Assembly (NCBI RefSeq): GCF_035084215.1
Contig: NW_027139939.1
Location: forward strand, 1-64,000
Direction: 5' to 3'
DNA: 64,000 bases
From: Heptranchias perlo
Taxonomy: Eukaryota
Of this stretch, positions 9,590 through 36,019 are shown piece after piece. The translations under genes and the position numbers were made by a program. The number at the start of each line of letters is the position of its first letter. The stretch's first letter is position 1. Below the pieces are notes generated by a model. The model saw nothing but the letters and a program-made list of their open reading frames with translations, did not search any database and was not told the origin of the DNA.

Positions 9590-9641
9590 ATGCTGCTTGT
9601 TACTTTACTGAACGTTTACTGTGTGCCCAACGTCTCCTCTG
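9590..9641 (+). CDS. MHC class I heavy chain, exon 1 (signal peptide MLLVTLLNVYCVPNVSS)
   Basis: ACAACATG start context, hydrophobic 17-aa leader ending V-S-S, strong donor TG|GTAAGC in phase 1, joins in frame to the alpha1 exon (G|AT = Asp). Confidence 0.8.
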
Positions 9642-10651
9642 GTAAGCAAATCAAACAGCTTCTATCTGTGGACAGTATTTGAGGGGACACCGAGATTGAA
9701 CCCATCTTCCATCACAAGATGCTCTCGAGCGGCCCCTGGGTTTGGACTGTCTCATTGCCTTGGGTGTGTGAGCGATTCAGGTTAAGGATGATCCCTGTTC
9801 TGGGGAGGGGTCACTGGGGGAGGTTGTGTCACTGATCTGTTTGCAAAGTGTTTGTTCGAGGCACTTTTCTTCAATTATTGTCAAGGCTCACAGACAAATA
9901 ACAGCCATTTTGGGGGGTGAGGTATTAGAGCTGTACCTTGGAAGCAGTGGAAGGGAAGGGGATGGAGGGAATGGGAAGGGACAGGAAAGAAAAGGAAGGG
10001 GAAGGGAAGGGAAGGAATCGGAAAGGAAGGGAAAGGGAATGGAAGGGGAGGGAAGGAAAACCCTTTCCCTCGGATGGTGTTTGAAGGAGGATTCCATTAT
10101 CCCCTTTCACATAACGGGCTCGATTGTGGTTTTAGCTCCGAGACATTAGGCATCACCTGGGCTGAGTTCAGAACGGAAATCTGGCCGGGCGGGGGGGGGG
10201 ATTTCAATAGAAGGAAAATGCTCCAGGTTCTGTTCCTGCCGTGTGATCCTCCTCTCCAGATTTTGCTCTCTCTCTGCCCCGCCCAGTTGATGCTGAACAC
10301 CCAGGTGGTAAAGGTGAAAATCGACCTCAATATTACTGGACCACAGACACGTGTGAACCTTTCAGAGATTGTGTTCTGATCGATGTGTTCTGCCTCCTCC
10401 CTCTCACCCCCATTCCTTGTTCGTGCCAAAACCCCATCGGCTCCTCCAACTCCACAGAATTGACTCGAAGGTTCATTTCTTCACCTTTAAAGCCCTCTCT
10501 GTCCTCCTCCCTTCCCACCTCCGCAATCTCCCCCCAATCTCATGCCCCCACATGCCCCCTCCGCTCCTCCCACACCGGACTAACCTCTCCTTCTCCACCG
10601 CCTCTGTTCCACCACTGGGATCCGATCCTTCAGTCTCTCCTGTCCCTGCCC

Positions 10652-12871
10652 TCTCCAGCAATCTCCCTCAGGATTCCTGCCTTGTCCCTTCCCGGCCTCT
10701 CCACTGTTCCTGAATCAACTTCTGAGTGTGATTCTGGCTCCTCTTAAATCCTCTCTTTGGGCTCCTCCCTCCTGCTCTGTGCTCTGAGGCGTCTCCCTGT
10801 ACACGAGGGCTGCTGTAGTAATGTAAGCTGCTGCACACAGTCAAAGCATCTCATCGGAACATGGGAACAGGAGGAGGCCATTCAGCCCCTCAAGCCTGTT
10901 CCGCCATTCAATTAGATCATGGCTGATCTGTTTCTTAACACCACCCACCCGCCTTGGTGCCATATCCCATAATAACCTTGCCTGACAAAAATCGATCAAT
11001 CTCAGTTGTGAAATTTTCAATTGACCCCCAGCCTCAACAGCATTTTGGGGGAGAGAGTTCCAGATTTCCACTCCCCTTTGTGTGAAGAAACGCTTCCTGA
11101 CATCACCCCTGAACGGCCTGGCTCTAATTTTAAGGTGACGCCCCCTTGTTCTGGACTCTCCCACTGGAGGAAATAGTTTCTCTCTATCTTCAATATCAAA
11201 TCCTTCAATGATCTTAATTACAGCACCCGTTAATCTTCTGCACTCAAGGGAATACAAGCCTCGTCTGTGCAACCTGTCCTCATAATTTAACCCTTTCAGC
11301 CTCCAGTATGAAAGTACTTCTCATAATGAATGGCGTTTCCTACATTAGAACAGTGATGACACTTTCACATTACTTCACTTTCTGTGAAGCGCTTTGGGAC
11401 ATCCTGAGGTTGTGAAAGGTGATGTATAAAAAGATCTTTTGTTCTTTCCGAACCTTCTTGTGCTGCTTCAGCAGGGTGACACTGAAATCGAAGCAGATTC
11501 GAAGCCTGTCCCCCCGTTCCCACCTTCACCTCACAGCAACACAATGGACTTTGGACTGTCCGATGTCCGATGTGTTGCTCAGGCCCATGACTGACTTTTA
11601 TTTCTGAGCAAACACTGCCCGTTTATTATAGTCTCTGAGCGGGTCAAGGCCAAAGTGAACTCTGTGTGTCCGATTGTGGGGAGAATGAGCTGCTGACTCT
11701 TCAATAATCAACTGGTGCTCGAGGAAAAAATACTCACAGTGATGTTGATCTGGGTGAATTAGAATAAATTGGCATCGAAGCAAATTCACAGACAGATTTT
11801 TATGTTAATTTTCAATGCACCGTCTTCGAGTCGCGCTTAACATGAGGCTCCTCAGAACAGCAATCCATGAGGATAACAGAACATTGAACAATGTCACCAA
11901 ATCCAGTCAGTGGACGTCATGCTCAAACTGAGGGGGAGGGGGAAAGGGAGGGAGAGGGATAGTGGGAGGGAGATGGAGAGGGAGAATGGGAGGGGGAGTC
12001 GGAGGGAGAGTTGGAGGCAGAGGCTGAGGGGGAGGGGAGGGAGAGTGGAGGGGAGGGAGAGTGGAGGGGAGGGAGAGGCTGGGGGAGCTAGAGGGAGAGA
12101 GGGAGGGTGATGGGGAAGGGACAGAGAAGGGGAGCGAGAGGGAGAGGTGCAGGAGGGGGTGTGTGAGTGAAGAGAGAGGGTAAAGGTGGGGAGATGGGGA
12201 GGGAGAGGGGGAGTCAGACAAAGAGAGGGAGAGGAAAGGGAAGAGGATGAGGCAGATGGGGAGAGAGAGGGAGATGGGGAGGGAGAGGGTGGGAAAGGGA
12301 GAGAGGGATGGTGGGAGTGAGTGGGGGATGAGGAGGGGGAGGGGAGGGAGTGGGGAGATTATCTGGTCATTATCTCGTTGATGTTTGTGGGATCTTGCTT
12401 TGCGCAACTTGGCTGCCGTGTTTCCTACATTAAAACAGTGACTACACTTCACTAATACTTCACTGTCTGTAAAACTCTTTGGGAGGTCCTGAGGTGGTGA
12501 AATCACAATAGGAATGTGAGTCTCTCTTTTCTTTGTGGTCCCATTGCCAGTGAGAGTCGGTGCATTGGGAAGAGAATGGGAGGGGTGAAAGTGGGAGTCT
12601 GGAATAGACCATTGAAATACAGGGGGTGTAACCAGATGCGATGGTTCAGTGTTAATACTGGGCTGGGCCTCAGTGTGAACCCCTGCTGTAAGATGCAGGC
12701 TCAGACTCCACTCCCTGGGACCCAGTGACCAGAACAAGTCCCTCCATTCTAACTGGATCTGGTTATCAGACCTGCTGCACACAAGCACCAACAAGTAGCT
12801 TCAGACTCGAGTGGTGTTGAAAAGCGCAAGAGATTAAGTTACTGTTACAGCAGCTTCTCTCCTGGTTAATC
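10652..12871 (+). repeat. Local segmental duplication, copy B (inside intron 1)
   Basis: Matches 7312-9566; similarity stops at CTGGTTAATC, 23 nt before the leader ATG position of copy A. Confidence 0.95.
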
Positions 12872-13067
12872 CGTGTCCATGACTGACATTTATTTCTGGT
12901 CAAACACTGTCTGTTTATTGTAGTCTCTGAGCACGTCAAGGCCAAGGTGAACTCTAAGGGGTCGATTTTAACCCCATGAACGGGTGGGTTTGGGTGCAGG
13001 TGGGAAGGTAAAAATTGTAAAAATCTAAAACCCGCCTTCAAACCGACCACTTCCGGTTTTAACGGCA

Positions 13068-16000
13068 TAGAACCATACAAAGGATACAGCACAGAAGGGG
13101 GCTATTCGGCCCATCGTGTCCGTGCCGGCTCGAAAAACAACCAGGTCCCCATTCTAGTCCCACCTTCCAGCACCCGGTCCTTAGCCCTGCAGCTTACAGC
13201 ACTTTAGATGCAGGTCCAGGTACTTTTTAACAGAGTTGAGGGTCCCTGCCTCTACCACCAATTCAGGCAGCGAATTCCATACACCCACCACCCTCTGGGT
13301 AAAAGTGTTTTTCCTCATGTCCCCTCTAATCCTTCCGCCAATCAGCTCAAATCTATGTCCTCTAGTTCTTGAACTCTCCGCTAGGGGAAACAGGTACTTC
13401 CTGTCTACTCTATCTAGGCCCCTCATAATTTTGTACACCTCAATCAAGTCCCCCCTCAGCCTCCTCTGCTCCAAGGAAAACAACCCCAGCCTATCCAATC
13501 TCTCCTCGTAGCTGCAATTTTCAAGCCCTGGCAACATTCTTGTAAATCTTCTCTGCACTCTCTCCAGAACAATTACGTCCTTCCTGTAATGTGGTGACCA
13601 GAACTGCCCACAATACTCCAGCTGTGGCCTTACCAGCATTTTATACAGTTCCATCATTACATCCCTGATTTATTATTCTATGCCTCGGCTAATAACGGAG
13701 GGCATTCCGTATGCCTTTTCACAACCTTATCTACCTGTACTGCCACCTTCAGGGACCTGTGCTCATGCACTCCAAGGTCTCTCACTTCCTCTACCCCTCT
13801 CAATATATTCCCGTTTACTGCGTATTCCCTTTTACTGTTTGCCCTCCCGAAGTGCATTACCTCACACTTCTCCAGGTTGAACTCCATTTGCCACTTTTCC
13901 GCCCACTCCACCAACCCATTGATATCTTCTTGGAGTCTACAGCTATCCTCTTCACTGTCAACTACACGGACAATTTTTGTGTCGTCTGCAAATTTGCCAA
14001 TCATACCCCCTACATTCAAGTCCAAATCATTAATATATACCACAAACAGCAAGGGACCCAACACTGAGCCTTGTGGCACACCACTGGAAACGGATTTCCA
14101 TTCTCAAAGACATCCATCGACTTTTACCCTTTGTTTCCTGTTACTGAGCCAATTTTGGATCCAATTCACCACATTTCCCTGTATCCCATGGGCTTTTACC
14201 TTTCTGACCAGTCTGCCATGTGGGACCTTGTCAAATGCCTTACTAAAATCCATGTAGACATCACTCTCATCAATCCTCCTTGTCACTTCCTCAAAGAATT
14301 TAATCAGATTTGTAAGGCATGACCTTCCCTGAACAAATCCATGCTGACTATCCCTGATGAAACCATGCCTTTCCAAGTGACAGTTTATCCTATCTCTCAG
14401 TATTGATTCTAATAGTTTGCCCACCACCGAGGTAAGACTGACCGGCCTATAATTGTTCGGCCTTTACCTCTTACCCTTTTTAAACAACGGTACTATGTTT
14501 GCAGTCTTCCAGTCCTCCGGTACCTCCCCTGTATCTGGTGAGGATTGGAAAATGATCCTCAGAGCATCCGCTATTTCCTCCCTGGCTTCCTTCAATAGCC
14601 TAGGAAACAATCCATCCGACCCTGGTGACTTATCAACTTTCAGGGATTCCACTCCCTCTTGTACTTCCTCTCTCGTTATGTTTACCTTATCCAATATTTC
14701 ACACCTCTCCTCTTTAACTACTACGTCCGGATCATCCCTTTCCTTTGTGAATACAGAGACAAAATATTCATTTAAAACCCTACCCACGTCCTCTGCTTCT
14801 GCACACAAGTTACCCTTATCGTCCCTGATAGGTCCCACCTTTTCCTCAGCTATCCTCTTGTTCTTAATGTACTGATAAAACATCTTTGGGTTTTCTTTAA
14901 TCTTACTCGTTAATATTTTTTCATGCCCTCTCTTTGCTTTCCTTATTTCCTTTTTTACGTCATCCCTGTACTTTCTATACTCCTCTAGGCTTTCTGCAGT
15001 ATTTAGTTTTCTGTGACAGTCATAAGCTTTCTTTTCCTGCTTTACCTTGCCCCGTATACTTCTAGACAACCAGGGGGCTCTAAATTTGGCAGTGCCACCC
15101 TTTTTCTTTGAGGGGACGTGTCTGCATTGTACCCGTAGAATTTCACTTTTTAGTGCCTCCCACTGGCTTGCCACTGATTTCTCCTCAAGTCGTTGTGTCC
15201 AGTCCACTTCTGCCAAATCACCTCTAAGTTCTGTAAAATTTGCCTTCCCCCAATTTAAAACATTTACTCCTGATTTAACACTGTCCTTTTCCATAATAAT
15301 GCTAAAACTAACTGAATTGTGGTCACTATCCCCATTATGGTCACCCACTGTCACTTCACCCACTTGCCCATCTTCATTTCCCAGGACTAAATCTAGAATG
15401 GCATCCCCTCTTGTTGGGCTTGTCACGTACTGGCTAAAAAAGTTCTCCTGGACACTGATCAAGAATTTTACGCCCTCTGTGCCCCTCACACTGTTTGAAT
15501 CCCAGTTGATGTTAGGGTGGTTGAAATCCCCTACTATTATTGCCCTCTTATTTTTGCACTCAGAAATTTGCCAACATATTTGTTCTTCTATCTCCCTTTC
15601 GCTATTCGGGGGTCTAGAGTACACTCCTAGTAGTGTGACTGCCCCTTTTTTATTCCTTAGCTCAACCCATACGGCCTCGATTGATGATCCATTTAGCATA
15701 TCATCCCTTCTCACAACTCTAATTGATTCTTTAACCAATAATGCTACCCCCCTCCTTTTATATCACCCACTCTATCCTGCTTGAACACTCTATATCCAGG
15801 GATATTGAGCTGCCAGTTATCCCCCTCTTTAAGCCAGGTTTCCATTATAGCAATGATATCATGCTGCCACGTGTCTATCTGTGCCCTTAGCTCATCTGCT
15901 TTGTTTGTAATACTCCTTGCATTGAAGTATATACCCTTTAACCCCGTCAAATTCCTGTGCTGAACACTATTTAACCTTTGCTTTTTTGCATTTCTGAGTC

Positions 16001-20342: not shown

Positions 20343-20603
20343 ATTTCCACATCCTCGCATTTTACTACATACTGAGCCGTGGCGGGGCCGAGATGCCCGA
20401 GTACAGCTTGGTCGCGATGCTCGATGACTATGAGATAGTGTATTTCGACAGCACCCTGCAGCGGACTGTGCCCAGACAGCAGTGGATGGCCGACTCCTTC
20501 GACAACCATCACTGGGACGCCATCGCCATCACAATGGCGGGGTTCCATGGTCTGGTCAGAGGAAACGCCGAGATATTTTACCGACAGCAACACGGTGCCT
20601 CGA
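20343..20603 (+). CDS. MHC class I heavy chain, exon 2 (alpha1 domain)
   Basis: CCTGCAG acceptor, A|GTGAGT donor, 261 nt, phase 1/1. DFHILAFYYILS...PEYSLVAMLDDYEIVYFDS...VPRQQWM...HWD matches the alpha1 pattern. Confidence 0.93.
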
Positions 20604-20639
20604 GTGAGTATCCTCACAGAGCCGGTGCAGCTATCGACT

Positions 20640-23400
20640 GACAGGAGGAAAGGATTTGTATCCATAGAGAGCCTTATCCTGTCTCGGAGAAATGTCCCGA
20701 ACCACTTTACACCCATTAAATGACTTGGGATGACCTGGTCATTGGCACTATCTGGGAGTAACATGGCAGACATTTTCAGCACAGCAAATGGCAATGAGAT
20801 GATTGATTTGTTCATCTGTTTTTATTGGTGTGGATTGAGGGAGAAATGGGAGCAATTGGTTCTTTTTATGTTCATTTGAACAGGAAGACGGGGCCTCGAT
20901 TTAACGTCTCATCTGAAGGACGGCATCTCCGACAGTGCAGCACTCCCTCAGTACTGCCCCTCCGACAATGCATCACTCCCTCAGTACTGCCCCTCCGACA
21001 ATGCATCACTCCCTCAGTACTGCCCCTCCGACAATGCATCACTCCCTCAGTATTGCCTCTCCGACAATGCATCACTCCCTCAGCACTGACCCTCCGACAA
21101 TGCATCACTCCCTCAGTACTGCCTCTCCGACAATGCATCACTCCCTCAGTACTGCCCCTCCGACAATGCATCACTCCCTCAGTACTGCCTCTCCGACAAT
21201 GCATCACTCCCTCAGTACTGCCCCTCCGACAATGCATCACTCCCTCAGTATTGCCTCTCCGACAATGCATCACTCCCTCAGTACTGCTCCTCCGACAATG
21301 CATCACTCCCTCAGTATTGCCTCTCCGACAATGCATCACTCCCTCAGTATTGCCTCTCCGACAATGCATCACTCCCTCAGTACTGCCTCTCCGACAATGC
21401 ATCACTCCCTCAGTATTGCCTCTCCGACAATGCATCACTCCCTCAGTACTGCCTCTCCGACAATGCATCACTCCCTCAGTATTGCCTCTCCGTCAGTGCA
21501 GCACTCCCTCAGTACTGCCCCTCCGTCAGTGCAGCACTCCCTCAGTACTGCCCCTCCGTCAGTGCATCACTCCCTCATTACTGCCCCTCCGACAGTGCAT
21601 CACTCCCTCAGTACTGCCCCTCCGACAATGCATCACTCCCTCAGTATTGCCTCTCCGTCAGTGCAGCACTCCCTCAGTACTGCCCCTCCGTCAGTGCAGC
21701 ACTCCCTCAGTACTGCCCCTCCGACAGTGCATCACTCCCTCAGTACTGCCTCTCGGACAGTGCATCACTCCCTCAGTACTGCCCCTCCGACAGTGCATCA
21801 CTCCCTCAGTACTGCCTCTCTGACAATGCATCACTCCCTCAGTACTGCCCCTCCGACAGTGCATCACTCCCTCAGTACTGCCTCTCGGACAGTGCATCAC
21901 TCCCTCAGTACTGCCCCTCCGACAGTGCATCACTCCCTCAGTACTGCCTCTCTGACAGTGCATCACTCCCTCAGTACTGCCCCTCCGACAGTGCATCACT
22001 CCCTCAGTACTGCCTCTCTGACAGTGCATCACTCCCTCAGTACTGCCCCTCCGACAATACATCACTCCCTCAGTACTGCCCCCCGACAGTGCAGCACTCC
22101 CTCAGTACTGCCTCTCTGACAGTGCAGCGCTCCCTCAGTACTGCCCCTCCGACAGTGCAGCACTCCCTCAGTACTGCCCCTACGTCAGTGCAGCGCTCCC
22201 TCAGTACTGCCCCTCCGACAGTGCAGCACTCCCTCAGTACTGCCCCTCCGACAGTGCAGCTCTCCCTCAGTACTGACCCTCCGACAGTGCATCACTCCCT
22301 CAGGACTGCCCCAACGTCAGTGCAGCTCTCCCTCAGTACTGCCCCTCCGACAGTGCAGCACTCCCTCAGTACTGCCCCTACGTCAGTGCAGCTCTCCCTC
22401 AGTACTGACCCTCTGAAAGTGCATCACTCCCTCAGTACTGCCCCTCCAACAGTGCATCACTCCCTCAGTACTGCCTCTCTGACAGTGCATCACTCCCTCA
22501 GTACTGCCCCTCCGACAATACATCACTCCCTCAGTACTGCCCCCCGACAGTGCAGCACTCCCTCAGTACTGCCTCTCTGACAGTGCATCACTCCCTCAGT
22601 ACTGCCTCTCCGACAGTGCATCACTCCCTCAGTACTGCCCCTCCGACAGTGCAGCGCTCCCTCAGTACTGCCCCTCCGACAGTGCAGCGCTCCCTCAGTA
22701 CTGCCTCTCCGACAGTGCAGCGCTCCCTCAGTACTGCCCCTCCGACAGTGCAGCACTCCCTCAGTCCTGCCTCTCCGACAGTGCAGCGCTCCCTCAGTAC
22801 TGCCCCTCCGACAGTGCAGCACTCCCTCAGTCCTGCCTCTCCGACAGTGCAGCGCTCCCTCAGTACTGCCCCTCCGACAGTGCAGCACTCCCTCAGTACT
22901 GCCCCTCCGACAGTGCAGCACTCCCTCAGTACTGCCCCTCCGACAGTGCAGCGCTCCCTCAGTACTGCCCCTCCGTCAGTGCAGCACTCCCTCAGTACTG
23001 CCTCTCCGACAGTGCAGCACTCCCTCAGTACTGCCCCTCCGACAGTGCAGCACTCCCTCAGTACTGCCCCTCCGACAGTGCAGCGCTCCCTCAGTACTGC
23101 CCCTCCGTCAGTGCAGCACTCCCTCAGTACTGCCTCTCCGACAGTGCAGCACTCCCTCAGTACTGCCCCTCCGACAGTGCAGCACTCCCTCAGTACTGCC
23201 CCTCCGACAGTGCAGCACTCCCTCAGTACTGCCTCTCCGACAGTGCAGCACTCCCTCAGTACTGCCCCTCCGACAGTGCAGCACTCCCTCAGTACTGCCC
23301 CTCCGACAGTGCAGCACTCCCTCAGTACTGCCCTGGAGTGTCAGCCCAGATTATGCGCTCAAATCTCTGGAGTGGGGCCTGAAACCACGACCTTCTTACT
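20640..23400 (-). mobile_element. DeuSINE (SacSINE1-like) carrying an internal 33-bp minisatellite at 20928-23333 (about 73 copies)
   Basis: Deu-domain-like flank GGGCCTCGATTTAACGTCTCATCTGAAGGACGGCA on one side and a tRNA-like head at 23335-23400 on the other; unit TCCGACAGTGCAGCACTCCCTCAGTACTGCCCC. Confidence 0.85.
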
Positions 23401-24139
23401 CTCACCTCTAGTTCAGAAGGTTGTGGGTTCAAGACCCACTCCAGAGACTGGAGCACAAAATCTCGGCTGGCACTCCCAGTGCAGCACTGAGGGAGGGGCA
23501 GCACTGTGGGAGGGGCAGCACTGTGGGAGGGGCAACACTGAGGGAGGGGCAGCACTGTGGGAGGGGCAGCACTGAGGGAGGGGCAGCACTGTGGGAGGGG
23601 CAGCACTGAGGGAGGGGCAGCACTGAGAGAGGGGCAGCACTGAGGGAGGGGCAGCACTGTGGGAGGGGCAGCACTGAGGGAGGGGCAGCACTGTGGGAGG
23701 GGCAGCACTGAGGGAGGGGCAGCACTGTGGGAGGGGCAGCACTGAGGGAGGGGCAGCACTGAGGGAGGGGCAGCACTGAGGGAGGGGCAGCACTGAGGGA
23801 GGGGCAGCACTGTGGGAGGGGCAGCACTGAGGGAGGGGCAGCACTGAGGGAGGGGCAGCACTGAGGGAGGGGCAGCACTGAGGGAGGGGCAGCACTGTGG
23901 GAGGGGCAGCACTGAGGGAGGGGCAGCACTGTGGGAGGGGCAGCACTGTGGGAGGGGCAGCACTGAGGGAGGGGCAGCACTGAGGGAGGGGCAGCACTGA
24001 GGGAGGGGCAGCACTGAGGGAGGGGCAGCACTGAGGGAGGGGCAGCACTGTGGGAGGGGCAGCACTGAGGGAGGGGCAGCACTGAGGGAGGGGCAGCACT
24101 GAGGGAGGGGCAGCACTGAGGGAGGGGCAGCACTGAGGG
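23401..24139 (+). mobile_element. DeuSINE head followed by a 17-bp minisatellite (GCAGCACTGAGGGAGGG, about 39 copies)
   Basis: AGAAGGTTGTGGGTTCAAGACCCACTCCAGAGAC head with B-box-like GGTTCAAG, then a 17-nt period from 23479. Confidence 0.85.
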
Positions 24140-24589
24140 ATTTGATGTGAGCACCTTGAACGTTGGAATGAAATCATCGCTGCCACTTGTTTCTCCTCTT
24201 CTAAAGCTGCGTTGCCAGGGTTACTAACAAACAGATGAAATCAGGACAGGCGGGTCCATCAAGCCTGTCCTGTCTTGGCACGGTGAAACAACACACACAC
24301 ACACACCATCAGCACCCTCTCCCTCCCACAGTCACACAATCTCCTGGGAGAGGCCAAAGAAAGAGGATGAAACTGAGGCCAAGTTAGGAAAGCAAACACT
24401 CTGGGAGATTCCTCTGCGACCCCCCCCCCAGGGAATCGAGGAAGGTGCAGGAGACCACAGTGTCTGATATCACTGGTCCCCATTAACCCCACACACCTCC
24501 TATAACTCGAGATACTTTCTATTGGTCGCCAGTCCCCTTTCCAACACTTGCAGTCCACACACACACACTGTGCATGCAGGCAACTTGTT

Positions 24590-27346: not shown

Positions 27347-27402
27347 TATGTACCCGATCGAACCCTTTTCACATTTTCAATTGACTTGAGTTGTTTCTCC
27401 AG

Positions 27403-27678
27403 GTGTTTTCTTTGTCCAGGGAATGTGTGGCTGCGAACTGAACAGCGACAACTCCACGGAGGGGTTTATAAAGTTTGGATATGACGGGGAGGACGCGTAT
27501 GTTTTTGACAAGGACAGATTGAGTTGGATTGCGGTGAATCCAGAGTTCCAGACTTTAGCAGACCGGTGGAATGCGAACACCTTCATGAACAAATACTTCA
27601 AGACCCTGTTGGAAAAGGACTGTGTGAAGTGGCTGCTGATATACCTTCGGGCTGGGCGAGAAGCACTACAGAGGAAAG
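27403..27678 (+). CDS. MHC class I heavy chain, exon 3 (alpha2 domain)
   Basis: TTTCTCCAG acceptor, AAG|GTACC donor, 276 nt. VQGMCGCEL...FGYDGED...SWIA...W...DCVKWLLIYLRAGREALQRK with the C101-C164 disulfide pair. Confidence 0.95.
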
Positions 27679-28330
27679 GTACCTCGAGCGAGCGGGAACT
27701 GGAGGTGCCGTACAGGCAAAGTTTATATTCCCAGTCTGTCCTGAGCCAGCTGTTCCCGGACAGGGTAGCAGTGAGGGGTGCTGCACCTGGCCTCAGTACC
27801 CCTTGGGGTGGGTGGGGTGGGGATGGGGGAGATAATCGGGCAGGTGACCTAAATCCGATGACCTACTCAGTCTCCCCGGCTGGAAAGCCCGTGCGTGTTG
27901 ACATCGGGTGAGGACGGGGTTCAACTAAATTGTAATACCCCCATGGTTGAATAGCTTCCTGGTCCTCACTGTGAAGGCTCACTCGTGAACACTGGGTGCT
28001 TGTGTGCGTTACCGGAACGTGACCCGTTACATGGAATTTACAACACAGAAACAGGCCATTCGGCCCAACAGGTCTATGCCAGTGTTATTGCTGCACCCTC
28101 CCTACTTCATCTCCCCCGATCAGCATATCCTTCTATTCCTTTCTCCCTCATGTGTTTATCCAGCTTCCCCTTAAAGGCATCTGTGCTATTCGCCTCAACT
28201 ACTCCTTGTGAGAGCGAGCTCCACATTCAAACCACTCTCTGCGTTTCTCCTGAATTCCCCATTGGATTTATTAGTGACTCTCTTATATTTATGGCCCCTC
28301 GTTCAGGCCTCTGCCACAAGTGGAAACATC

Positions 28331-29992
28331 GGGGGAAAAATTTGGATGTGGCCGTTTTTGGGCGGGGGCAGCGTGATGTGCTTTACCCCGTGTCCAATGG
28401 TCCCGGCGCAGGCAGGATGCAAGTTTCGACCCACCCGAGGACCGACCTGCGATCAGCGTTCCATCCCAGGCCTTGCACCTGGAATCAATGCAATTCACAC
28501 TTTCCACCACCAGAGGGAGGGCAATCTCTTAAAGGGAGGATGTTTGTCAGAAATCTCTTAAAGGGAGCTGGTACCTGTTATTTGCTGAAAATAACAGTCT
28601 GCACGGAGTCTGAACGGAGATCAGACATCGCACACGTAAAACACGATGCAGGTCCCATCCCTATGTTTACACACTGATGAGTTATGTTAAAACATTGAAT
28701 AAAGGTTGCACACTACTAAATCCCACATCCTCCAATCTGCACACCAGACCTCACCAATCTGCCGATCTGAGTTGGTACCAGGCCTGTGAGAGTGCATGCA
28801 CCAAGGTTCTCTGCTGATGCACTAGAGACCTTGGTGCAAGAGGTGGACAGAAGGAGGGACATCCTATATCCGCAGTGGGGGGAAGGGAGCGGGAGGGCAA
28901 GAGACCCTCCAGACATTTACTCAAAAGGCAGTGGGAGGCAGCGGGGGACGAAGTCAATGCCAGGAGCACAGCATCATGAACATGGATGCAGTGCAGGAAG
29001 AAGTTCAATGCTTTGACATGAGTGGTCAAGGTGAGTGAGGTCAACTGTCAAGTGGTGTCTCCAACCAACTGCTCCACACACGACACCCCCATCACCCACA
29101 TACCAACAAACTCTTTCCATCAGTACTCAACTCTTCCCATCAGATGCTTCCTCTCACCCTTACACATTACCACTGTTTCAAGCCGTCCACCCACAACTCA
29201 CAGGCCACACGCACTGGCAGCTATTCAACCATGACAGGAACATCACCCAGACACAGGAGAAGGTGGTGCATATCAAGAGGCAGCAAGTGACAGTGGCATT
29301 CAGCCCCTCGAGCCTGTTCCACCATTCAATGAGATCATGGTGGACCTGTGACCTAACTCCATATACCCACCTTAGCCCCATATCCCTTAATACCCTTGGT
29401 TCACAGAAATCTATCAATCTCAGATTTAACATTCACAAGTGAGCGAGCATCAACTGCCGTCTGCAGAAGAGCGTTCCAAACATCTCCCACCCTTTGTGTG
29501 AAGAAGCATTTCCTAACTTCACTCCTGCACGTCATGGATCTAAATGTTTGGCGATGTCCCCGTGTCCCAGTATTCAAATGTAGGAGACCTCCAAAAACAG
29601 TTATGAATGTCTTGGCAGCCAGAAGCAATAATCCAGCCACTAACCTGTAAATCCTGCATGGTCCCTTTAAATAGAGCCGGTGGGGGGTCCTCCAGGAACT
29701 GTAAGACACGTTCAGATGGTCGGGGTTAAGACTGTGCGTTGAGTTGAGCGTTAAGTCCCGAAATGGTGTCTATCACTTTAAATCAGCGTTGCACACTGAC
29801 TGAAGCCATTTTCTCCCTACTTTACATGATTCCAGCGTTCGTTATCTGCGCCTGCGCTAACTCCGATACCAAGATGGCGTCTGGCGCACGTCACGCAGGA
29901 AATGTGCGTGCGCATCCAAGACGCCATCTTGGATGTCGGAGAGGCCGTCTAGCGCCGAAACAACGGGCGCTACACGGCCCTATTTAGCGCCC
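28331..29992 (+). mobile_element. PIF/Harbinger-like non-autonomous DNA transposon inserted into a CR1 fragment
   Basis: ATC flanks both ends (28328-30 and 29993-95); GGG...CCC termini with imperfect TIRs; decayed Myb/SANT-like segment APRFSADALETLVQEVDRRRDILY...W...EVNARS...TWMQCRKKFN; the interrupted CR1 (28030-28330 and 29993-30062) rejoins cleanly. Confidence 0.75.
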
Positions 29993-30203
29993 ATCTTCCC
30001 TACGTCTATCCTATCAAACCCTTTCATAATCTTAAAGACCTCTATCAGGTGACCCCTCAGCTGAACTCCGGTGAACTCCAGCTGTCTCTCAGCATCAGTC
30101 ATCTGCCTTCAGGCCGAGAAAATTGATGGTGGTGGGCGGGGAAGAAATGAAGGCAAAAGAAGAGAACTTGTCACCGATTGTACTCTTTGTTTAAATCTCT
30201 CAG

Positions 30204-30476
30204 TCGCCCCTGAGGTGTTTATTGGGAAGAGGAGTGACGGGGACAGAGTGCTAAGGGTCTCCTGCCTTGTGTCGGGGTTCTACCCCTGGGCCATCGAGGT
30301 GACTTGGTTGGGGAATGGCGAGGAGATCGCTGACATTGAATCCAGTGACGTGCTGCCCAACCAGGATATGACCTATCGGGTACTGAAAACGATCGAGCTG
30401 AGTGGAGACGACAGGAAGAGCTACTCCTGTCATATCGAGCACGCCAGCCTCCTGCGGGGGATCAACGTACCCTGGG
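30204..30476 (+). CDS. MHC class I heavy chain, exon 4 (alpha3, C1-set Ig domain)
   Basis: CTCTCAG acceptor, G|GTGAGT donor, 273 nt. VAPEV...VSCLVSGFYPWAIEVTW...VLPNQDMTY...YSCHIEHASL...W. Confidence 0.96.
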
Positions 30477-30499
30477 GTGAGTGGCAAATCGGGGGGGGG

Positions 30500-33120
30500 T
30501 CCTCAGGGTCTTTCCCTGTGTCTCGGGGGGGCCGCAAGGTACTTCCTGGAACTCTGGGTCCTTCCCCGATTCTCGGGAGGGCCGCAGGGCTTTTCTCCGT
30601 GTCTTGGGGGCCCACAGGGTCCATCCCCATGCCTCTGGGTCATTCCCCGTGCCTCTGGGTCATTCCCCGTGCCTCTGGGTCATTCCCCGTGCCTCTGGGT
30701 CATTCCCCGTGCCTCTGGGTCCTTCCCCGTGCCTCTGGGTCCTTCCCCGTGCCTCTGGGTCCTTCCCCGTGCCTCTGGGTCCTTCCCCGTGCCTCTGGGT
30801 CCTTCCCTGTGCCTCTGGGTCATTCCCCGTGCCTCTGGGTCCTTCCCCGTGCCTCTGGGTCATTCCCCGTGCCTCTGCATCCTTCCCTGTGCCTCTGGAT
30901 CATTCCCTGTGCCTCTGGGTCATTCCCTGTGCCTCTGGGTCATTCCCTGTGCCTCTGGGTCATTCCCTGTGCCTCTGGGTCTTTCCCTGTGCCTCTGGGT
31001 CTTTCCCTGTGCCTCTGGGTCCTTCCCCGTGCCTCTGGGTCCTTCCCCGTGCCTCTGGGTCCTTCCCCGTGCCTCTGGGTCCTTCCCCATTCCTCTGGGT
31101 CCTTCCCCATTCCTCTGCATTCTTCCCCATGCCTCTGGGTCATTCCCTGTGCCTCTGGATCATTCCCCGTTCCTCTGCATCCTTCCCTGTGCCTCTGGGT
31201 CATTCCCTGTGCCTCTGGGTCCTTCCCCGTGCCTCTGGGTCCTTCCCCATTCCTCTGCATTCTTCCCCATGCCTCTGGGTCATTCCCTGTGCCTCTGGAT
31301 CATTCCCCGTTCCTCTGCATCCTTCCCTGTGCCTCTGGGTCCTTCCCCGTGCCTCTGGATCATTCCCCGTTCCTCTGCATCCTTCCCTGTGCCTCTGGAT
31401 CATTCCCTGTGCCTCTGGATCATTCCCTGTGCCTCTGGATCATTCCCTGTGCCTCTGGGTCATTCCCTGTGCCTCTGCGTCATTCCCTGTGCCTCTGGGT
31501 CATTCCCCGTGCCTCTGGGTCCTTCCCCGTGCCTCTGGGTCCTTCCCCGTGCCTCTGGGTCCTTCCCTGTGCCTCTGGTTCATTCCTCGTACCTCTGCAT
31601 CATTCCCTGTGCCTCTGGATCCTTCCCCGTGCCTCTGGGTCCTTCCCCGTGCCTCTGGGTCATTCCCTGTGCCTCTGGGTCTTTCCCTGTGCCTCTGGGT
31701 CCTTCCCCGTGCCTCTGGGTCCTTCCCCGTGCCTCTGGGTCCTTCCCCGTTCCTCTGCATCCTTCCCTGTGCCTCTGGATCCTTCCCCGTGCCTCTGGAT
31801 CCTTCCCCGTGCCTCTGGGTCCTTCCCCGTGCCTCTGGGTCCTTCCCCGTGCCTCTGGGTCCTTCCCCGTGCCTCTGGGTCATTCCCCGTGCCTCTGGGT
31901 CATTCCCCGTGCCTCTGGGTCATTCCCCGTGCCTCTGGGTCATTCCCCGTGCCTCTGGGTCATTCCCCGTGCCTCTGGGTCATTCCCCGTGCCTCTGGGT
32001 CATTCCCCGTGCCTCTGGGTCATTCCCCGTGCCTCTGTGTCTTTCCCTGTGCCTCTGGGTCCTTCCCCGTGCCTCTGGGTCCTTCCCCGTGCCTCTGGGT
32101 CCTTCCCCATGCCTCTGGGTCATTCCCTGTGCCTCTGGATCATTCCCCGTTCCTCTGCATCCTTCCCTGTGCCTCTGGGTCATTCCCTGTGCCTCTGGAT
32201 CATTCCCTGTGCCTCTGGGTCCTTCCCCGTGCCTCTGGGTCATTCCCCGTGCCTCTGGATCATTCCCTGTGCCTCTGGATCATTCCCTGTGCCTCTGGGT
32301 CCTTCCCCGTGCCTCTGGATCATTCCCCGTTCCTCTGCATCCTTCCCTGTGCCTCTGGATCATTCCCTGTGCCTCTGGGTCATTCCCTGTGCCTCTGGGT
32401 CATTCCCCGTGCCTCTGGATCATTCCCCGTGCCTCTGGGTCATTCCCCGTGCCTCTGGGTCATTCCCCGTGCCTCTGGGTCATTCCCCGTGCCTCTGGGT
32501 CATTCCCCGTGCCTCTGGGTCCTTCCCCGTGCCTCTGGGTCCTTCCCTGTGCCTCTGGTTCATTCCTCGTACCTCTGCATCCTTCCCTGTGCCTCTGGAT
32601 CCTTCCCCGTGCCTCTCGGTCATTCCCCGTGCCTCTGCATCATTCCCCGTGTCTCAGGGTCCTTCCCCGTGCCTCTGGATCATTCCCCGTTCCTCTGCAT
32701 CCTTCCCTGTGCCTCTGGGTCCTTCCTCGTGCCTCTGGATCATTCCTCGTACCTCTGCATCCTTCCCTGTGCCTCTGGGTCCTTCCTCGTGCCTCTGGGT
32801 CCTTCCCTGTGTCTCAGAGTCATTCCCTGTGCCTCTGGGTCCTTCCCCGTGCCTCTGGGTCATTGCCGTGCCTCAGGGTCCTTCCTTGTGTCTCTGCGTC
32901 CTTCCCCACTTCTCTGGATCCTCCCCTGTGACTCTAGATAATTCCCTGTGACTCGAGGTCATTGCTGTGCCTCAGGGTCCTTCCTTGTGTCTCTGCGTCC
33001 TTCCCCACTTCTCTGGATCCTCCCCTGTGACTCTAGATAATTCCCTGTGACTCGAGGTCATTCCCTGTGCCTCAAGGTCATTCCCTGTGCCGCAGGGTCC
33101 TTCCCCGTGTCTCTGCATCC
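30500..33120. repeat. 20-bp minisatellite (GCCTCTGGGTCATTCCCCGT), more than 110 copies
   Basis: Exact 20-nt period over 30631-32870 with degenerate edges; source of the 816-956 aa spurious ORFs. Confidence 0.97.
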
Positions 33121-33127
33121 TTCGGGG

Positions 33128-34200
33128 GAGCGCTGCACTGTCAAAGAGGCAGTACTGAGGGAGTGCGGCACTGTCGGAGGGTCAGTACTGAGGGAGAGCT
33201 GCACTGTCGGAGGGTCAGTACTGAGGGAGAGCGGCACTGTCGGAGGGTCAGTACTGAGGGAGAGCTGCACTGTCGGAGGGTCAGTACTGAGGGAGAGCGG
33301 CACTGTCGGAGGGTCAGTACTGAGGGAGAGCTGCACTGTCGGAGGGTCAGTACTGAGGGAGTGCGGCACTGTCGGAGGGTCAGTACTGAGGGAGAGCTGC
33401 ACTGTCGGAGGGTCAGTACTGAGGGAGAGCGGCACTGTCGGAGGGTCAGTACTGAGGGAGAGCGGCACTGTCGGAGGGTCAGTACTGAGGGAGAGCTGCA
33501 CTGTCGGAGGGTCAGTACTGAGGGAGAGCGGCACTGTCGGAGGGTCAGTACTGAGGGAGAGCTGCACTGTCGGAGGGTCAGTACTGAGGGAGAGCTGCAC
33601 TTTCGGAGGGTCAGTACTGAGGGAGTGCTGCACTGTCGGAGGGTCAGCACTGAGGGAGTGCTGCACTGTCGGAGGGTCAGTACTGAGGGAGTGCGGCACT
33701 GTCGGAGGGTCAGTACTGAGGGAGAGCTGCACTGTGGGAGGGTCAGTACTGAGGGAATGCTGCACTGTCGGAGGGTCAGTACTGAGGGTGAGCTGCACTG
33801 TCGGAGGGTCAGTACTGAGGGAGAGCTGCACTGTCGGAGGGTCAGTACTGAGGGAGTGCGGCACTGTGGGAGGTGCCAGCTTTCGGATGAGATGTTAAGT
33901 CAAGGCCCCAACTGCCATCTCAGGTGGAGGTAAAACATCCCATGACATTATTTCGAGGATGAGCAGGAGAGTTATCCCCGGTGTCCTGGCCAATATTTAT
34001 CCCTCAATAAACATGAATATAAAAAAAGTGATCTGATCATTATCACATTGCTGGTCGTGGGATCTTGCTGTGCGCAAATTGGCTGCCGGGTTTTCCACAT
34101 CACAACAGTGACTACACTTCAAAATAGTTTAATTGGCTGTAAAGTGCTTTGAGACATCCTGAGCTCATGAAAGGTGTTATATAAATACACCTCTTCCTTT
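33128..34200 (+). mobile_element. DeuSINE with internal 33-bp minisatellite (33128-33870)
   Basis: The array runs straight into GGAGGTGCCAGCTTTCGGATGAGATGTTAAG...CCCCGGTGTCCTGGCCAATATTTATCCCTCAA and an L2-like tail. Confidence 0.88.
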
Positions 34201-34379
34201 TCTCTTTCAATAGCACATGCCCACCTTTCACGGTGTTACACTGAGCAAAATCCCCTTCAATTTACCCAATAGCACAATTGGTAAATGACCTGCCCAATGT
34301 GGATCAAAGACGGACAGACCAGAGGGTCCCAGATTTAACCCCTGGCCTCTGCTGAGTGGGAGGATTTCAATTGGAGAGA

Positions 34380-35470
34380 CTGCCCTTTCCCCATAGCCCT
34401 GTCACAATCCAAACTAACCCCACTGCCCCACTCTCTCCCCATAGCCCTGTATCAATCCCAAACTAATCCCACTGCCCCACTCTCTCCCCATAGCCCTGTA
34501 TCAATCCCAAACTAATCCCACTGCCCCGCGCCCTCCCCATAGCCCTGTATCAATCCCAAACTAATCCCACTGCCCCGCGCCCTCCCCATAGCCCTGTATC
34601 AATCCCAAACTAATCCCACTGCCCCACTCTCTCCCCATAGCCCTGTATCAATCCCAAACTAATCCCACTGCCCCACTCTCTCCCCATAGCCCTTTATCAA
34701 TCCCAAACTAATCCCACTGTCCCGCTCTCTCCACATAGCCCAGTATCAATCCCAAACTAATCCCACTGCCCCACTCTCTCCCCATAGCCCAGTATCAATC
34801 CCAAACTAATCCCACTGTCCCGCTCTCTCCCCGTAGCCCTGTATCAATCCCAAACTAATCCCACTGTCCCACTCTCCCCCCATAGCCCTGTATCAATCCC
34901 AAACTAATCCCACTGCCCCACTCTCTCCACATAGCCCTGTATCAATCCCAAACTAATCCCACTGCCCTACTCTCTCCCCATAGCCCTGTATCAATCCCAA
35001 ACTAATCCCACTGCCCCACTCTCCCCATAGCTCTGTATCATTCCCAAACTAATCCCACTGCCCCACTCTCTCCCCATAGCCCAGTATCATTCCCAAACTA
35101 ATCCCACTGTCCCACTCTCTCACCATAGCCCTGTATCAATCCAAAACTAATCCCACTGTCCCACTCTCTCCCCATAGCCCTGTATCAATCCCAAACTAAT
35201 CCCACTGTCCCACTCTCTCCCCATAGCCCCGTATCAATCCCAAACTAATCCACTGTCCCACTCTCTCCCCATAGCCCTGTATCAATCACAAACTAATCCC
35301 ACTGCCCCGCTCTCTCCCCACAGCCCTGTATCAATCCCAAACTAACCTCACTGCCCTGTATCTCCCTGAGCTTCGAATGTTTAGCCACCCTTCCCTTAAA
35401 ACATACAATGGTCTCTGTCTCAACCACTCCCTGTGGCCAAACATTGCAATCTGTAACCATCATCTGTGTA
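34380..35470 (-). repeat. 49-bp minisatellite (about 20 copies) continuous with a CR1 ORF2 C-terminal remnant
   Basis: Unit ATCAATCCCAAACTAATCCCACTGCCCCACTCTCTCCCCATAGCCCTGT; adjoining minus-strand peptide HFFTQ...VWPQGVVETET...GCGERAGQWD*. Confidence 0.9.
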
Positions 35471-35828
35471 AAGAAATGGCCAATAGATTCCCCTCCTTGG
35501 CATTGCACTGTTATTTTACAGTGTGTAATTCTGCAGCCTCTATCCCTGATATCAGATGGTTCGTGTGTTGATTTAATCTGCAGAGTACAGGAATTGCAAT
35601 TTAAACTCTGTAACTAGTCAGGAACTGCCCTGTTTCTGAGATTAATGAATGGTAACTAGTTGTATTCTGCTTATTATTTGTAATGGAGCCAGTTAGGCAT
35701 GTCTCAATCCATTTTAAATTGTTCATTACCCTATCAGACATGTACTGTACCAGTGTGCAGCTTAATGAAGTACCTAATAAAATCATTTGGAAATAATTAT
35801 TGATCAACATCATTTTAAAATTCAATAG

Positions 35829-36019
35829 AGAGGGCGACAGAAGGAGGCACGAATGTCGGGATTGGGACTGGAGCAGCAGCCGTCTCACTCACTCTTCTTG
35901 GCATCATCGTCGGAATTGGCTTCTGGAGCAAGAGGCAAAACAGGAGAGACCAGCAGAGCCCATCAGAGACCAGCAAAACCCATCAGAGACCAGTAGAAAC
36001 TGGCAGAGTCCTGCCGTGA
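35829..36019 (+). CDS. MHC class I heavy chain, exon 5 (connecting peptide, TM and cytoplasmic tail to stop)
   Basis: CAATAG acceptor, phase 1. ERATEGGTN-VGIGTGAAAVSLTLLGIIVGIGFW-SKRQNRR...ETGRVLP* (hydrophobic span then basic stop-transfer). This frame is absent from the ORF track. The 3' end assumes no further splicing. Confidence 0.78.

What the first reader, a model, noticed from the sequence alone, without database searches (positions are those of the whole stretch)
9590..36019. Intact non-classical MHC class I gene with a hydrophobic groove: candidate lipid- or small-molecule-presenting lineage
Seen: five exons with phase-1 GT-AG junctions join into an open 350-aa class I heavy chain spread over 26 kb of repeats. 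Hand alignment to HLA-A2 numbering gives, for the peptide-terminus anchors, Y7>F, Y59>H, Y/R84>Q, Y123>A, T143>L, K146>R and Y159>L; only W147 and Y171 are kept. Groove-facing positions are mostly apolar (I63, M67, F70, L73, V74, I80, F81, V95, I114, F116, L143, L159). Class I/beta2-microglobulin interface residues Q96, D119, G120, D122 and P235 and both disulfides are kept. Established: those anchors are near-invariant in classical class I from sharks to mammals, and an apolar groove without them typifies lipid-binding class I-like proteins (CD1, EPCR, chicken YF1). Cartilaginous fish have several named non-classical lineages (e.g. UBA, UCA, UDA, UEA). Inference: a beta2m-associated, non-peptide (lipid-like) presenting molecule. 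I cannot tell from sequence alone whether it belongs to a described lineage or a new one.
Basis: partly seen in the sequence, partly recalled or inferred. Interest (0 to 1): 0.85.

Follow-up and report, generated by a model that had tools for sequence, protein, structure and literature searches.

The report
Shark non-classical MHC class I gene
This is a real, transcribed MHC class I-like gene of the sharpnose sevengill shark with a greasy groove that lacks the peptide anchors; it is the sister of the shark molecule UGA, reported to bind lipids, and is already in RefSeq under an automatic 'MR1-like' name.

Summary
Five GT-AG, phase-1 exons (9590-9641, 20343-20603, 27403-27678, 30204-30476, 35829-36019) encode a 350-aa class I heavy chain. 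The exon 3-4 junction is present in spliced contigs of three runs from one sample. RefSeq XP_067837839.1 (Heptranchias perlo, 'MR1-like') contains the same five exon translations, so the gene call is not new.

These residues are conserved in orthologues from 13 sharks and rays.

The gene belongs to a mostly single-copy, MHC-linked lineage that I call 'A'. Lineage A is the well-supported sister of UGA (PDB 9CH4, released 2026) and is distinct from UFA (8GM8), UAA and the probable UDA. Its predicted groove is the most hydrophobic of all lineages compared. It lacks MR1's Schiff-base lysine and shows no CD1 sequence kinship or tail motif. It also carries an invariant unpaired cysteine at the groove floor (HLA position 99).

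A hydrophobic non-peptide ligand is the best reading, but no ligand was tested. In H. perlo the gene is amplified into at least 11 near-identical proteins.

I rate it a new member of a known kind, of moderate interest.

The parts
9590..9641 (+). Exon 1: start codon and leader (MLLVTLLNVYCVPNVSS plus the first base of the Asp codon), donor CTG|GTAAGC
   Evidence: The X1 contig has 350 nt upstream of exon 3, which equals 261 nt of exon 2 plus 89 nt, fitting 52 nt of coding sequence plus about 37 nt of 5'UTR. It is identical to residues 1-17 of RefSeq P0230.
20343..20603 (+). Exon 2: alpha1 domain (86 whole codons at 20345-20602), phase 1 in and out
   Evidence: The best PDB match is UGA 9ch4 at 1.2e-22. 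Against 1.8 billion representatives only 16 proteins score below 1e-10, the best being a skate orthologue at 70% identity.
27403..27678 (+). Exon 3: alpha2 domain (91 whole codons at 27405-27677), with Cys98 and Cys161 (mature numbering) forming the alpha2 disulfide
   Evidence: Pfam MHC_I 1.8e-18. The RNA contig piece starts exactly at 27403 and the joint lies at 27678|30204.
27426..27428 (+). Codon TGT for the extra, unpaired cysteine (precursor C113, mature C96, HLA-A2 position 99, MR1 Ile96) on the groove floor
   Evidence: The mature ectodomain has five Cys. C113 is invariant in 13 orthologues. UGA has Phe and classical UAA has Tyr/Thr at this column. It aligns with MR1 Ile96.
30204..30476 (+). 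Exon 4: alpha3 Ig C1-set domain (90 whole codons at 30206-30475)
   Evidence: Pfam C1-set 1.3e-16. RNA contig pieces end exactly at 30476. The A>G variant at 30326 in run X3 corresponds to the Ile/Val difference between paralogous copies.
35829..36019 (+). Exon 5: connecting peptide, transmembrane helix and cytoplasmic tail, with stop TGA at 36017-36019. The last 25 or so codons lie in a degenerate short repeat.
   Evidence: self-matches of the tail at 35965-36182. The AF2 helix spans 302-327. It has the same C-terminus as RefSeq P0230. Copy P0227 reads the repeat in another frame. The 3' end of the mRNA was not resolved, and there is no AATAAA within 2 kb.
20927..24140 (.). Intron 2 minisatellites (33-bp unit x73 and 17-bp unit x39)
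30624..35356 (.). Intron 4 minisatellites (20-bp x125, 33-bp x23, 49-bp x20)
13181..15738 (-). LINE fragment (endonuclease and reverse-transcriptase ORFs) inside intron 1; a second fragment lies at 24727-26009 in intron 2
   Evidence: ORFs; Exo_endo_phos_2 for 14467-15738

Best explanation
The window comes from Heptranchias perlo. It carries one copy of a conserved elasmobranch non-classical class I gene, which I call lineage A and which RefSeq labels 'MR1-like'. Lineage A is the sister paralogue of UGA and arose before sharks and rays split.

Shown here: the gene is intact and spliced into mRNA, and it encodes a type I membrane heavy chain (leader, alpha1, alpha2, alpha3 C1-set, TM, short tail) that a predicted structure places in the class I fold.

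Inferred: it pairs with beta2-microglobulin, because the contact residues are kept. Its groove has lost the residues that clamp peptide termini and is lined almost wholly by apolar side chains that barely vary over roughly 300 million years (my estimate of the shark-ray split). It therefore most likely holds one conserved class of hydrophobic non-peptide ligand (lipid, lipopeptide or similar) and shows it to an innate-like T-cell or NK-type receptor, as is reported for its sister UGA. It does this without the MR1 lysine chemistry and without a CD1-type endosomal tail motif.
For: Gene and transcript.

Species and existing annotation.

Lineage: one-to-one orthologues exist in 13 sharks and rays, with E values of 1e-104 or lower for lineage A against about 1e-52 for the next full-length classical-type hits. 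An alpha1alpha2-only search finds only this lineage at E<=1e-18. In the careful tree, lineage A has support 100/100, UGA 100/100 and A+UGA 98/96. Both lineages occur in Pristiophorus and Leucoraja.

Naming of relatives: 9ch4 is titled 'shark nonclassical MHC class I, UGA' and is the top structural match (Z 27.5, rmsd 2.9, 41% identity). It is also the top sequence match (240 bits single sequence, 277 bits profile).

MHC linkage: the Pristis orthologue LOC127585976 lies in the MHC-Ib cluster between BRD2/B2M and COL11A2/RXRB/HSD17B8.

Groove: seven of nine anchors are replaced and these replacements are conserved. Over 43 groove positions the mean Kyte-Doolittle value is 1.05-1.44 with mostly 2 charged residues (3 in one orthologue). 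UGA gives 0.34-0.78, UAA -0.01 to 0.58 and the 51-gene shark clade -0.37 to 0.61.

Conservation: alpha1alpha2 (0.74-0.81 pairwise identity) is more conserved than alpha3 (0.65). The H. perlo copies are identical in alpha1alpha2 apart from two single substitutions.

Fold: the model has pLDDT above 90 over the platform with the usual helices.

Lipid binding by UFA and UGA is stated in PMC12562908, and UFA is called CD1-like in PMC10751288.
Against: There are no ligand data for this lineage. Lipid binding of UGA is known to me only from a review citing a personal communication. The excess conservation of groove over non-groove positions is not significant (181 of 2000 permutations reach it). The tail lacks a YXXphi endosomal motif, which a skate UGA (YQNI) and, from my own knowledge, CD1 possess. 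RNA evidence comes from one sample and one study, as assembled contigs, and covers only the exon 3-4 junction directly. Beta2m pairing rests on conserved residues only.
Confidence: 0.55

Rival explanations
1. It presents a narrow, conserved set of hydrophobic peptides or N-acylated peptides (HLA-E/Qa-1-like or chicken YF1-like use of a class I groove), not free lipids.
For: The overall platform is of ordinary class I size and fold. By VIA-align it ties with classical avian class I and with chicken YF1*7.1, including YF1 entries presenting N-myristoylated or N-palmitoylated ligands (Z about 25-26). W147 and Y171 are kept. The groove is monomorphic and conserved.
Against: Seven of the nine residues that hold peptide termini are replaced by residues that cannot make the same hydrogen bonds (F7, H59, Q84, A123, L143, L159) or are altered (R146). 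Only 2 of the 43 groove positions are charged in most orthologues.
Confidence: 0.15
2. It is a small-metabolite presenter in the manner of MR1, as its RefSeq name suggests.
For: Alpha2 is most similar to MR1 among solved structures (79 bits, 40 of 86 identical). MR1 ranks just after UGA for the whole protein (181-190 bits). Aromatic and apolar residues line the A' side. MR1 H58, Y152 and W164 are matched.
Against: MR1 Lys43 aligns with Thr42 (Thr, Ala, Cys or Ile in the orthologues). MR1 R9, S24, Y62, R94, Q153 and W156 align with Y, L, I, G, F and L. The roles of these MR1 residues are from my own knowledge. MR1 scores only marginally above classical fish class I (190 against 188 and 181 bits). 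In the tree the lineage groups with UGA, although no MR1 sequence could be included.
Confidence: 0.1
3. It binds no ligand in the groove and works as a cell-surface ligand or receptor in its own right (MIC/HFE/FcRn/ZAG-like), for instance as a stress or NK-receptor ligand.
For: Many class I-like proteins that lost the anchors have closed or empty grooves (my own knowledge). The recent amplification into near-identical copies in H. perlo is a pattern also seen for NK-ligand families (my own knowledge).
Against: Groove-facing residues stay apolar and nearly unchanged across sharks and rays, which suggests that a cavity is under constraint. The helices are predicted without extra kinks or prolines. 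The sister UGA is reported to be ligand-loaded.
Confidence: 0.15
4. The copy in this window is a redundant haplotig or an assembly duplicate, or a silent copy, and the transcripts come from other copies.
For: There are eleven distinct proteins at 90% identity or more, under 13 RefSeq accessions, on 7 or more unplaced scaffolds of 76-530 kb. The RNA contigs cannot be assigned to one copy with certainty.
Against: The X1 contig matches this window's exons 3 and 4 with 0 mismatches, including Ile at 30326 where other copies have Val. Three gene models each lie on two single scaffolds, so at least part of the amplification is real. The reading frame is intact.
Confidence: 0.05

Closest known systems
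UGA, shark non-classical MHC class I (PDB 9CH4, released 2026-03-18)
   Same: It is the sister clade (98/96 support) and the best sequence and structure match (41% identity, Z 27.5). The two share the alpha2-helix motif MNxYFKxLLExDCV, A123, G97, Y155/F156/L159/L160 and a mostly apolar groove. UGA is also found in both sharks and rays.
   Different: It is a separate orthologous group: both genes are present in Pristiophorus and Leucoraja. UGA keeps Y7 and Y59 and has more charged groove residues (4-7 against mostly 2). UGA has Phe, not Cys, at position 99, carries the N86 glycan site, and a skate UGA tail has YQNI. Lineage A has none of these.
UFA, shark 'CD1-like' non-classical class I (PDB 8GM8, released 2024-11-27)
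   Same: It is an elasmobranch MHC-Ib gene in the same MHC-Ib cluster according to PMC10751288. It shares the alpha1 stretch MLDDxQI.Y.DS.L...PRQQWMA.
   Different: It is only a distant relative (162 bits against 277 for UGA). It forms a separate long-branched clade (P0029/P0050/P0249). Its alpha2 is very divergent and its C-terminus is short and hydrophobic.
MR1 (mammals)
   Same: It is the best mammalian match and the source of the RefSeq name. Alpha2 is 46% identical over 86 residues and of the same length. Like MR1, lineage A has alpha1alpha2 conserved more than alpha3.
   Different: There is no Lys43 equivalent and no ribityl-binding arginines or glutamine, and the aromatic cradle is only partly matched. 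Orthology was not tested because no MR1 sequence could be brought into a tree.
CD1 (tetrapods)
   Same: The working principle proposed is the same: a non-polymorphic, beta2m-type class I-like molecule with an apolar groove lacking the peptide anchors.
   Different: There is no special sequence kinship: CD1 is absent from the best 60 PDB matches. The tail has no YXXphi motif. The platform resembles classical class I, YF1 and MR1 rather than CD1 in the structural ranking.
Chicken YF1*7.1
   Same: It is a class I-like molecule of ordinary platform size with a hydrophobic groove that takes lipids or N-acylated ligands. It ties with classical class I among structural matches (Z 25.8).
   Different: It is only 27% identical, comes from an unrelated lineage and is a different gene family.
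UEA/UCA (shark non-classical lineages with hydrophobic grooves)
   Same: They have lost the anchors, are MHC-linked and are described as hydrophobic (my recollection of Almeida et al. 2021; the paper is not held).
   Different: From memory, UEA is a large multigene family seen in sharks only. Lineage A is single-copy in most species and is present in rays. The 51-gene shark-only clade, which lacks the alpha2 disulfide, is the better UEA/UBA candidate.

Membership tests
MHC class I heavy chain (superfamily) | alpha1-alpha2 platform plus C1-set alpha3, TM and tail, one domain per exon, phase-1 introns | tested here: met
   The AF2 model gives a class I fold with pLDDT 84, and every top PDB match is class I.
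MHC class I heavy chain (superfamily) | Conserved disulfides C101-C164 and C203-C259, and beta2m-contact residues Q96, D119, G120, D122, P235 | tested here: met
   The cysteines are at mature 98/161 and 200/255. Q93, D115, G116, D118 and the LPNQD proline are present and conserved in the lineage. Pairing itself is inferred.
Classical class I (UAA) | Nine near-invariant residues that bind the peptide termini (Y7, Y59, R/Y84, Y123, T143, K146, W147, Y159, Y171) | tested here: not met
   Only W147 and Y171 are kept; the others are F, H, Q, A, L, R and L. The UAA rows (Triakis P0134 and others) carry nearly the full set in the same alignment; position 123 varies among them.
Classical class I (UAA) | High polymorphism concentrated in alpha1/alpha2 | tested here: not met
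   Eleven H. perlo proteins differ in alpha1alpha2 by two single substitutions only. Alpha1alpha2 is more conserved than alpha3 between species.
UGA lineage | Orthology with the protein of PDB 9CH4 | tested here: not met
   It is a sister clade, not the same clade. Both lineages have 100/100 support and co-occur in Pristiophorus and Leucoraja. Identity is 41%. Whether the authors' definition of UGA includes this paralogue cannot be checked, because the primary paper is not in the library.
UFA lineage | Orthology with the protein of PDB 8GM8 | tested here: not met
   8GM8 is titled UFA and matches P0029 at 48% identity. The UFA clade is separate and scores 162 bits against 277 for UGA.
UDA lineage | Eight of nine peptide-terminus anchors kept (from memory of Almeida et al. 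2020) | tested here: not met
   Two of nine are kept. P0018 of H. perlo is a better UDA candidate and forms its own clade. The defining feature itself is recalled, not read.
MR1 | Lys43 that forms a Schiff base with the ligand | tested here: not met
   MR1 K43 aligns with Thr42. The orthologues have T, A, C or I there.
MR1 | Ribityl/ligand pocket residues R9, S24, Y62, W69, R94, Y152, Q153, W156 | tested here: not met
   The aligned residues are Y, L, I, F, G, Y, F and L, so only Y152 is kept. The residue roles are from my own knowledge.
MR1 | Orthology by phylogeny | not testable with these tools
   No MR1 sequence could be fetched as a stored protein. By my reading of the alignments MR1 shares no exact 5-residue word with the query, which I take to be why the word-based search does not reach it.
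CD1 | Sequence kinship with CD1 | tested here: not met
   CD1 chains are absent from the best 60 of the whole-protein PDB searches. They appear only through the Ig domain or beta2m fusions.
CD1 | Deep, large hydrophobic A'/F' pockets | not testable with these tools
CD1 | Cytoplasmic YXXphi endosomal sorting motif (CD1b/c/d) | tested here: not met
   The tail WSKRQNRRDQQSPSETSKTHQRPVETGRVLP has no Tyr. No lineage A tail in the alignment carries the motif.

The most novel reading that the evidence does not exclude
Lineage A is a third, so far unnamed, ancient 'hydrophobic-ligand' class I lineage of elasmobranchs. Its invariant unpaired cysteine on the groove floor (mature C96, HLA position 99, the site of MR1 Ile96) tethers or senses its ligand covalently through thiol chemistry. 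That would be a capture principle analogous to MR1's Lys43 Schiff base but chemically different.
Probability: 0.1. Interest if true: 0.8.

Novelty: new member of a known kind. Interest (0 to 1): 0.4.

Why it matters
Sharks and rays are the oldest living vertebrates with an MHC. The recent UFA and UGA structures suggest that lipid-type presentation is as old as peptide presentation. This gene shows that UGA has a conserved sister paralogue, present in both sharks and rays, with an even more apolar and nearly invariant groove. That points to at least three old 'greasy-groove' lineages rather than two.

The automatic 'MR1-like' label in 13 genomes is misleading, because the MR1 ligand-capture residues are absent. 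The near-identical amplification in the sevengill shark and the invariant free cysteine in the groove both give concrete, testable handles.

Tried and rejected
Joined step left out. Exons were searched one by one (25/33). Whole-protein work used the public RefSeq protein P0230 that the tools returned, and I checked exon by exon that it contains the window's translations.

Literature. The primary papers on UDA and UEA (PMC7002201, PMC8454915 and one DOI) are not held. No paper cites 9CH4 or 8GM8, and no primary UFA/UGA paper was found. Statements about UDA, UEA and UCA features are therefore from memory.

Phylogeny. Trees including MR1, CD1 or HLA could not be built, because PDB chains cannot be stored and the word-based search does not reach MR1.

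Structure.

Rejected readings. I rejected classical UAA (anchors lost), UFA, UDA and an MR1 functional equivalent (no K43), and CD1 membership (no kinship, no tail motif). Greater conservation of groove than non-groove positions was tested and is not significant.

Other checks. There are no N stretches in the window.

Full report
1. Observation

Exon 1 is 9590-9641 (leader). Exon 2 is 20343-20603 (alpha1). Exon 3 is 27403-27678 (alpha2; the acceptor is the CAG at 27400-27402, not the nearer AG at 27418-27419, which would break the frame). Exon 4 is 30204-30476 (alpha3). Exon 5 is 35829-36019 (connecting peptide, TM and tail, with TGA at 36017-36019).

All introns are GT-AG and phase 1, with lengths of 10701, 6799, 2525 and 5352 nt. 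The split codons read D, S, V and E, and the total is 350 aa. Pfam gives MHC_I for alpha2 (1.8e-18), MHC_I for alpha1 (3.9e-06) and C1-set for alpha3 (1.3e-16). The window has no N and no second class I gene.

The introns are filled with LINE fragments and minisatellites.

Exons were searched one at a time, and the joined step was left out.

2. Transcription

Three runs of one sample and one study hold exon 3. Laid on 27300-30600, all three show the joint 27678|30204 (GT..AG).

A 1438-nt contig of X1 carries 27403-27676 and 30202-30476 without a mismatch. The pieces begin and end exactly at the predicted acceptor of exon 3 and donor of exon 4.

The contig has 350 nt further upstream, which equals exon 2 (261 nt) plus 89 nt and fits exon 1 plus a short 5'UTR. 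It has 539 nt further downstream.

Unique intron bins have about zero depth, so the runs behave as RNA. This is contig evidence from one sample, and only one junction is seen directly. X3 carries G at 30326, the Ile/Val difference that separates paralogous copies.

3. Whose gene it is

An HMMER scan of 1.8 billion representatives with alpha1 found only 16 proteins below 1e-10. The best was a skate protein at 70% identity.

Searching with that protein gave a sharply separated group. Lineage A scores E<=1e-104, and the next full-length hits, 'F10 alpha chain-like' proteins, score about 1e-52. The group comes from Leucoraja, Pristis, Mobula, Hypanus, Pristiophorus, Heptranchias, Scyliorhinus (two species), Mustelus, Cetorhinus, Stegostoma, Hemiscyllium and Chiloscyllium. 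[quoted passage not shown]

One of them, XP_067837839.1 of Heptranchias perlo (P0230, 350 aa, on a 76,278-nt scaffold), contains the window's five exon translations contiguously. The window is therefore H. perlo, and the same gene model is already public.

In H. perlo the 90% cluster holds 11 distinct proteins (13 accessions) on at least 7 unplaced scaffolds. Three models each lie on scaffolds of 463,596 and 449,286 nt. The copies differ by a handful of residues. This is either a recent tandem amplification or partly haplotigs. Other species show one gene.

4. Lineage

The PDB sequence search put 9ch4 first for alpha1 (1.2e-22) and for the whole protein (240 bits). MR1 followed at about 181 bits, grass carp UAA at 174, HLA-A2 constructs at about 170 and nurse shark UAA at 148.

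A profile of 13 orthologues gave UGA 277 bits, MR1 about 190, classical class I 165-188 and 8gm8 162, with no CD1 in the top 60.

I folded the RefSeq protein with a 103-sequence alignment (pLDDT 84, above 90 over the platform) and searched PDB. This gave the entry titles: 9CH4 is 'Crystal structure of shark nonclassical MHC class I, UGA' (released 2026-03-18), and it is the best match (TM 0.87, Z 27.5, rmsd 2.9 A, 41% identity). Below it, classical avian class I, chicken YF1*7.1 and MR1 all tie at Z about 25.

Folding a Cetorhinus relative of 8gm8 showed that 8GM8 is 'shark nonclassical MHC class I, UFA'.

In a careful ML tree (43 sequences, LG+C20), lineage A has support 100/100, UGA 100/100 and A+UGA 98/96. 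Rays and sharks are present in both, and Pristiophorus and Leucoraja each have one gene of each kind (the quick tree of 103 sequences agrees). Lineage A is therefore the sister paralogue of UGA, older than the shark-ray split.

It is not UFA, not UAA (the Triakis clade) and not the probable UDA (P0018 of H. perlo, which keeps eight of nine anchors).

The 51-gene, shark-only clade that lacks the alpha2 disulfide is the likelier UEA/UBA.

The Pristis orthologue, LOC127585976, is listed as 'MHC-Ib' in the supplement of PMC10751288. It lies between BRD2/B2M and COL11A2/RXRB/HSD17B8, the cluster said to hold UDA, UEA and UFA.

No submitter-given lineage name is attached to any lineage A protein. 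The primary UFA/UGA paper is not in the library, so I cannot say whether its authors count this paralogue under UGA or under another name.

5. Groove

I used classical shark UAA in the same alignment as the yardstick, with HLA-A2 numbering from my own knowledge. They are the same in all orthologues, except W147L in orectolobiforms.

Over 43 groove positions, lineage A has a mean Kyte-Doolittle value of 1.05-1.44, 26-28 apolar residues and mostly two charged ones (R146, D163; one orthologue has three). The corresponding values are 0.34-0.78 for UGA, -0.01 to 0.58 for UAA and -0.37 to 0.61 for the 51-gene clade. Small residues sit at floor positions 97 (Gly) and 123 (Ala).

The mature ectodomain has five cysteines, and the odd one is C96 (codon 27426-27428, HLA position 99, MR1 Ile96), a floor residue that by established structures points into the groove. 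It is invariant in all 13 orthologues, whereas UGA has Phe there.

Alpha1alpha2 is more conserved between species (0.74-0.81) than alpha3 (0.65), the reverse of classical class I. The extra conservation of groove positions over the rest of the platform is not significant.

6. MR1 and CD1

The RefSeq name comes from similarity. Alpha2 is 46% identical to MR1 over 86 residues without gaps. However, MR1 Lys43 aligns with Thr42, and R9, S24, Y62, R94, Q153 and W156 align with Y, L, I, G, F and L. The MR1 capture chemistry is therefore absent.

CD1 shows no special sequence kinship, and the tail has no YXXphi motif. A skate UGA tail does have YQNI.

The gene is thus filed under neither family. It may still work like a lipid presenter.

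7. Mechanism and odds

The gene, its transcript, its fold, its lineage and its groove make-up are shown. Beta2m pairing, an open groove and a hydrophobic non-peptide ligand are inferred. The ligand inference rests on the groove composition and on the statement in PMC12562908 that UFA and UGA bind lipids by crystal structure and mass spectrometry (a personal communication).

My odds are:
- hydrophobic non-peptide ligand: 0.55
- conserved hydrophobic or acylated peptides: 0.15
- no groove ligand: 0.15
- MR1-like small metabolite: 0.10
- silent or duplicate copy: 0.05

8. Verdict

The gene is a new member of a known kind: a UGA-related, hydrophobic-groove MHC-Ib. Interest is moderate.

The points worth keeping are the sister relation to UGA, the misleading 'MR1-like' label, the invariant free cysteine in the groove, and the amplification in the sevengill shark.

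Noticed in passing
window 62508-63770 (-): An intact 420-aa ORF encodes a C2H2 zinc-finger protein (zf-H2C2_2 6e-56, zf-C2H2 2e-43). A ZFP2-like gene also lies next to B2M in the Pristis MHC-Ib region.
   Followed up: partly
window 51984-55843 (-): A nearly complete LINE has three consecutive ORFs: ORF1 with a GDSL-esterase domain (54902-55843), an endonuclease (53256-54854) and a reverse transcriptase (51984-53255). Related fragments lie in introns 1 and 2 of the class I gene.
   Followed up: partly
window 20927-24140, 30624-35356, 37433-37922: There are large minisatellites (33-bp x73, 17-bp x39, 20-bp x125, 33-bp x23, 49-bp x20). The 33-bp family recurs in introns 2 and 4 and downstream of the gene, in both orientations. 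They create long spurious ORFs.
   Followed up: partly
window 35950-36180: The cytoplasmic tail coding sequence runs into a degenerate short repeat (CAGAGACCAGCA-like). Paralogue P0227 reads the same repeat in another frame and gains a different, longer tail. The Pristiophorus orthologue has many such units.
   Followed up: partly
window 36020-38000: There is no AATAAA or ATTAAA within 2 kb downstream of the stop codon, although the RNA contig extends 539 nt past exon 4. The 3' end of the mRNA is unresolved.
   Followed up: partly
window 9011-9487 and 11907-12794 (-); 9212-9424 and 12516-12728 (+): Near-identical ORF texts occur on both sides of exon 1, which suggests a repeated block of about 0.5-0.9 kb flanking the leader exon.
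   Followed up: no
H. perlo proteins P0148, P0221-P0230 (other scaffolds): The lineage is single-copy in 12 other species but has 11 distinct near-identical proteins (13 accessions) in H. perlo. These lie on at least 7 unplaced scaffolds, with three models each on two scaffolds.
   Followed up: partly
P0018 (XP_067834383.1, H. perlo, scaffold of 453,415 nt): A different class I-like gene keeps eight of nine peptide anchors (a probable UDA). It lies on the same scaffold as a lineage A copy (XP_067834387.1) and is also labelled 'MR1-like' by RefSeq.
   Followed up: partly
P0239 (Amblyraja UGA), P0029/P0050 (UFA): The skate UGA tail carries YQNI, a YXXphi-type motif. UFA proteins end in a short hydrophobic stretch without a charged tail, which may be a GPI signal or a truncated model.
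   Followed up: no
P0161, P0207 and the 51-gene shark clade: This large shark-only class I clade has lost both alpha2 disulfide cysteines (C101 to V/other, C164 to L/V/other).
   Followed up: partly
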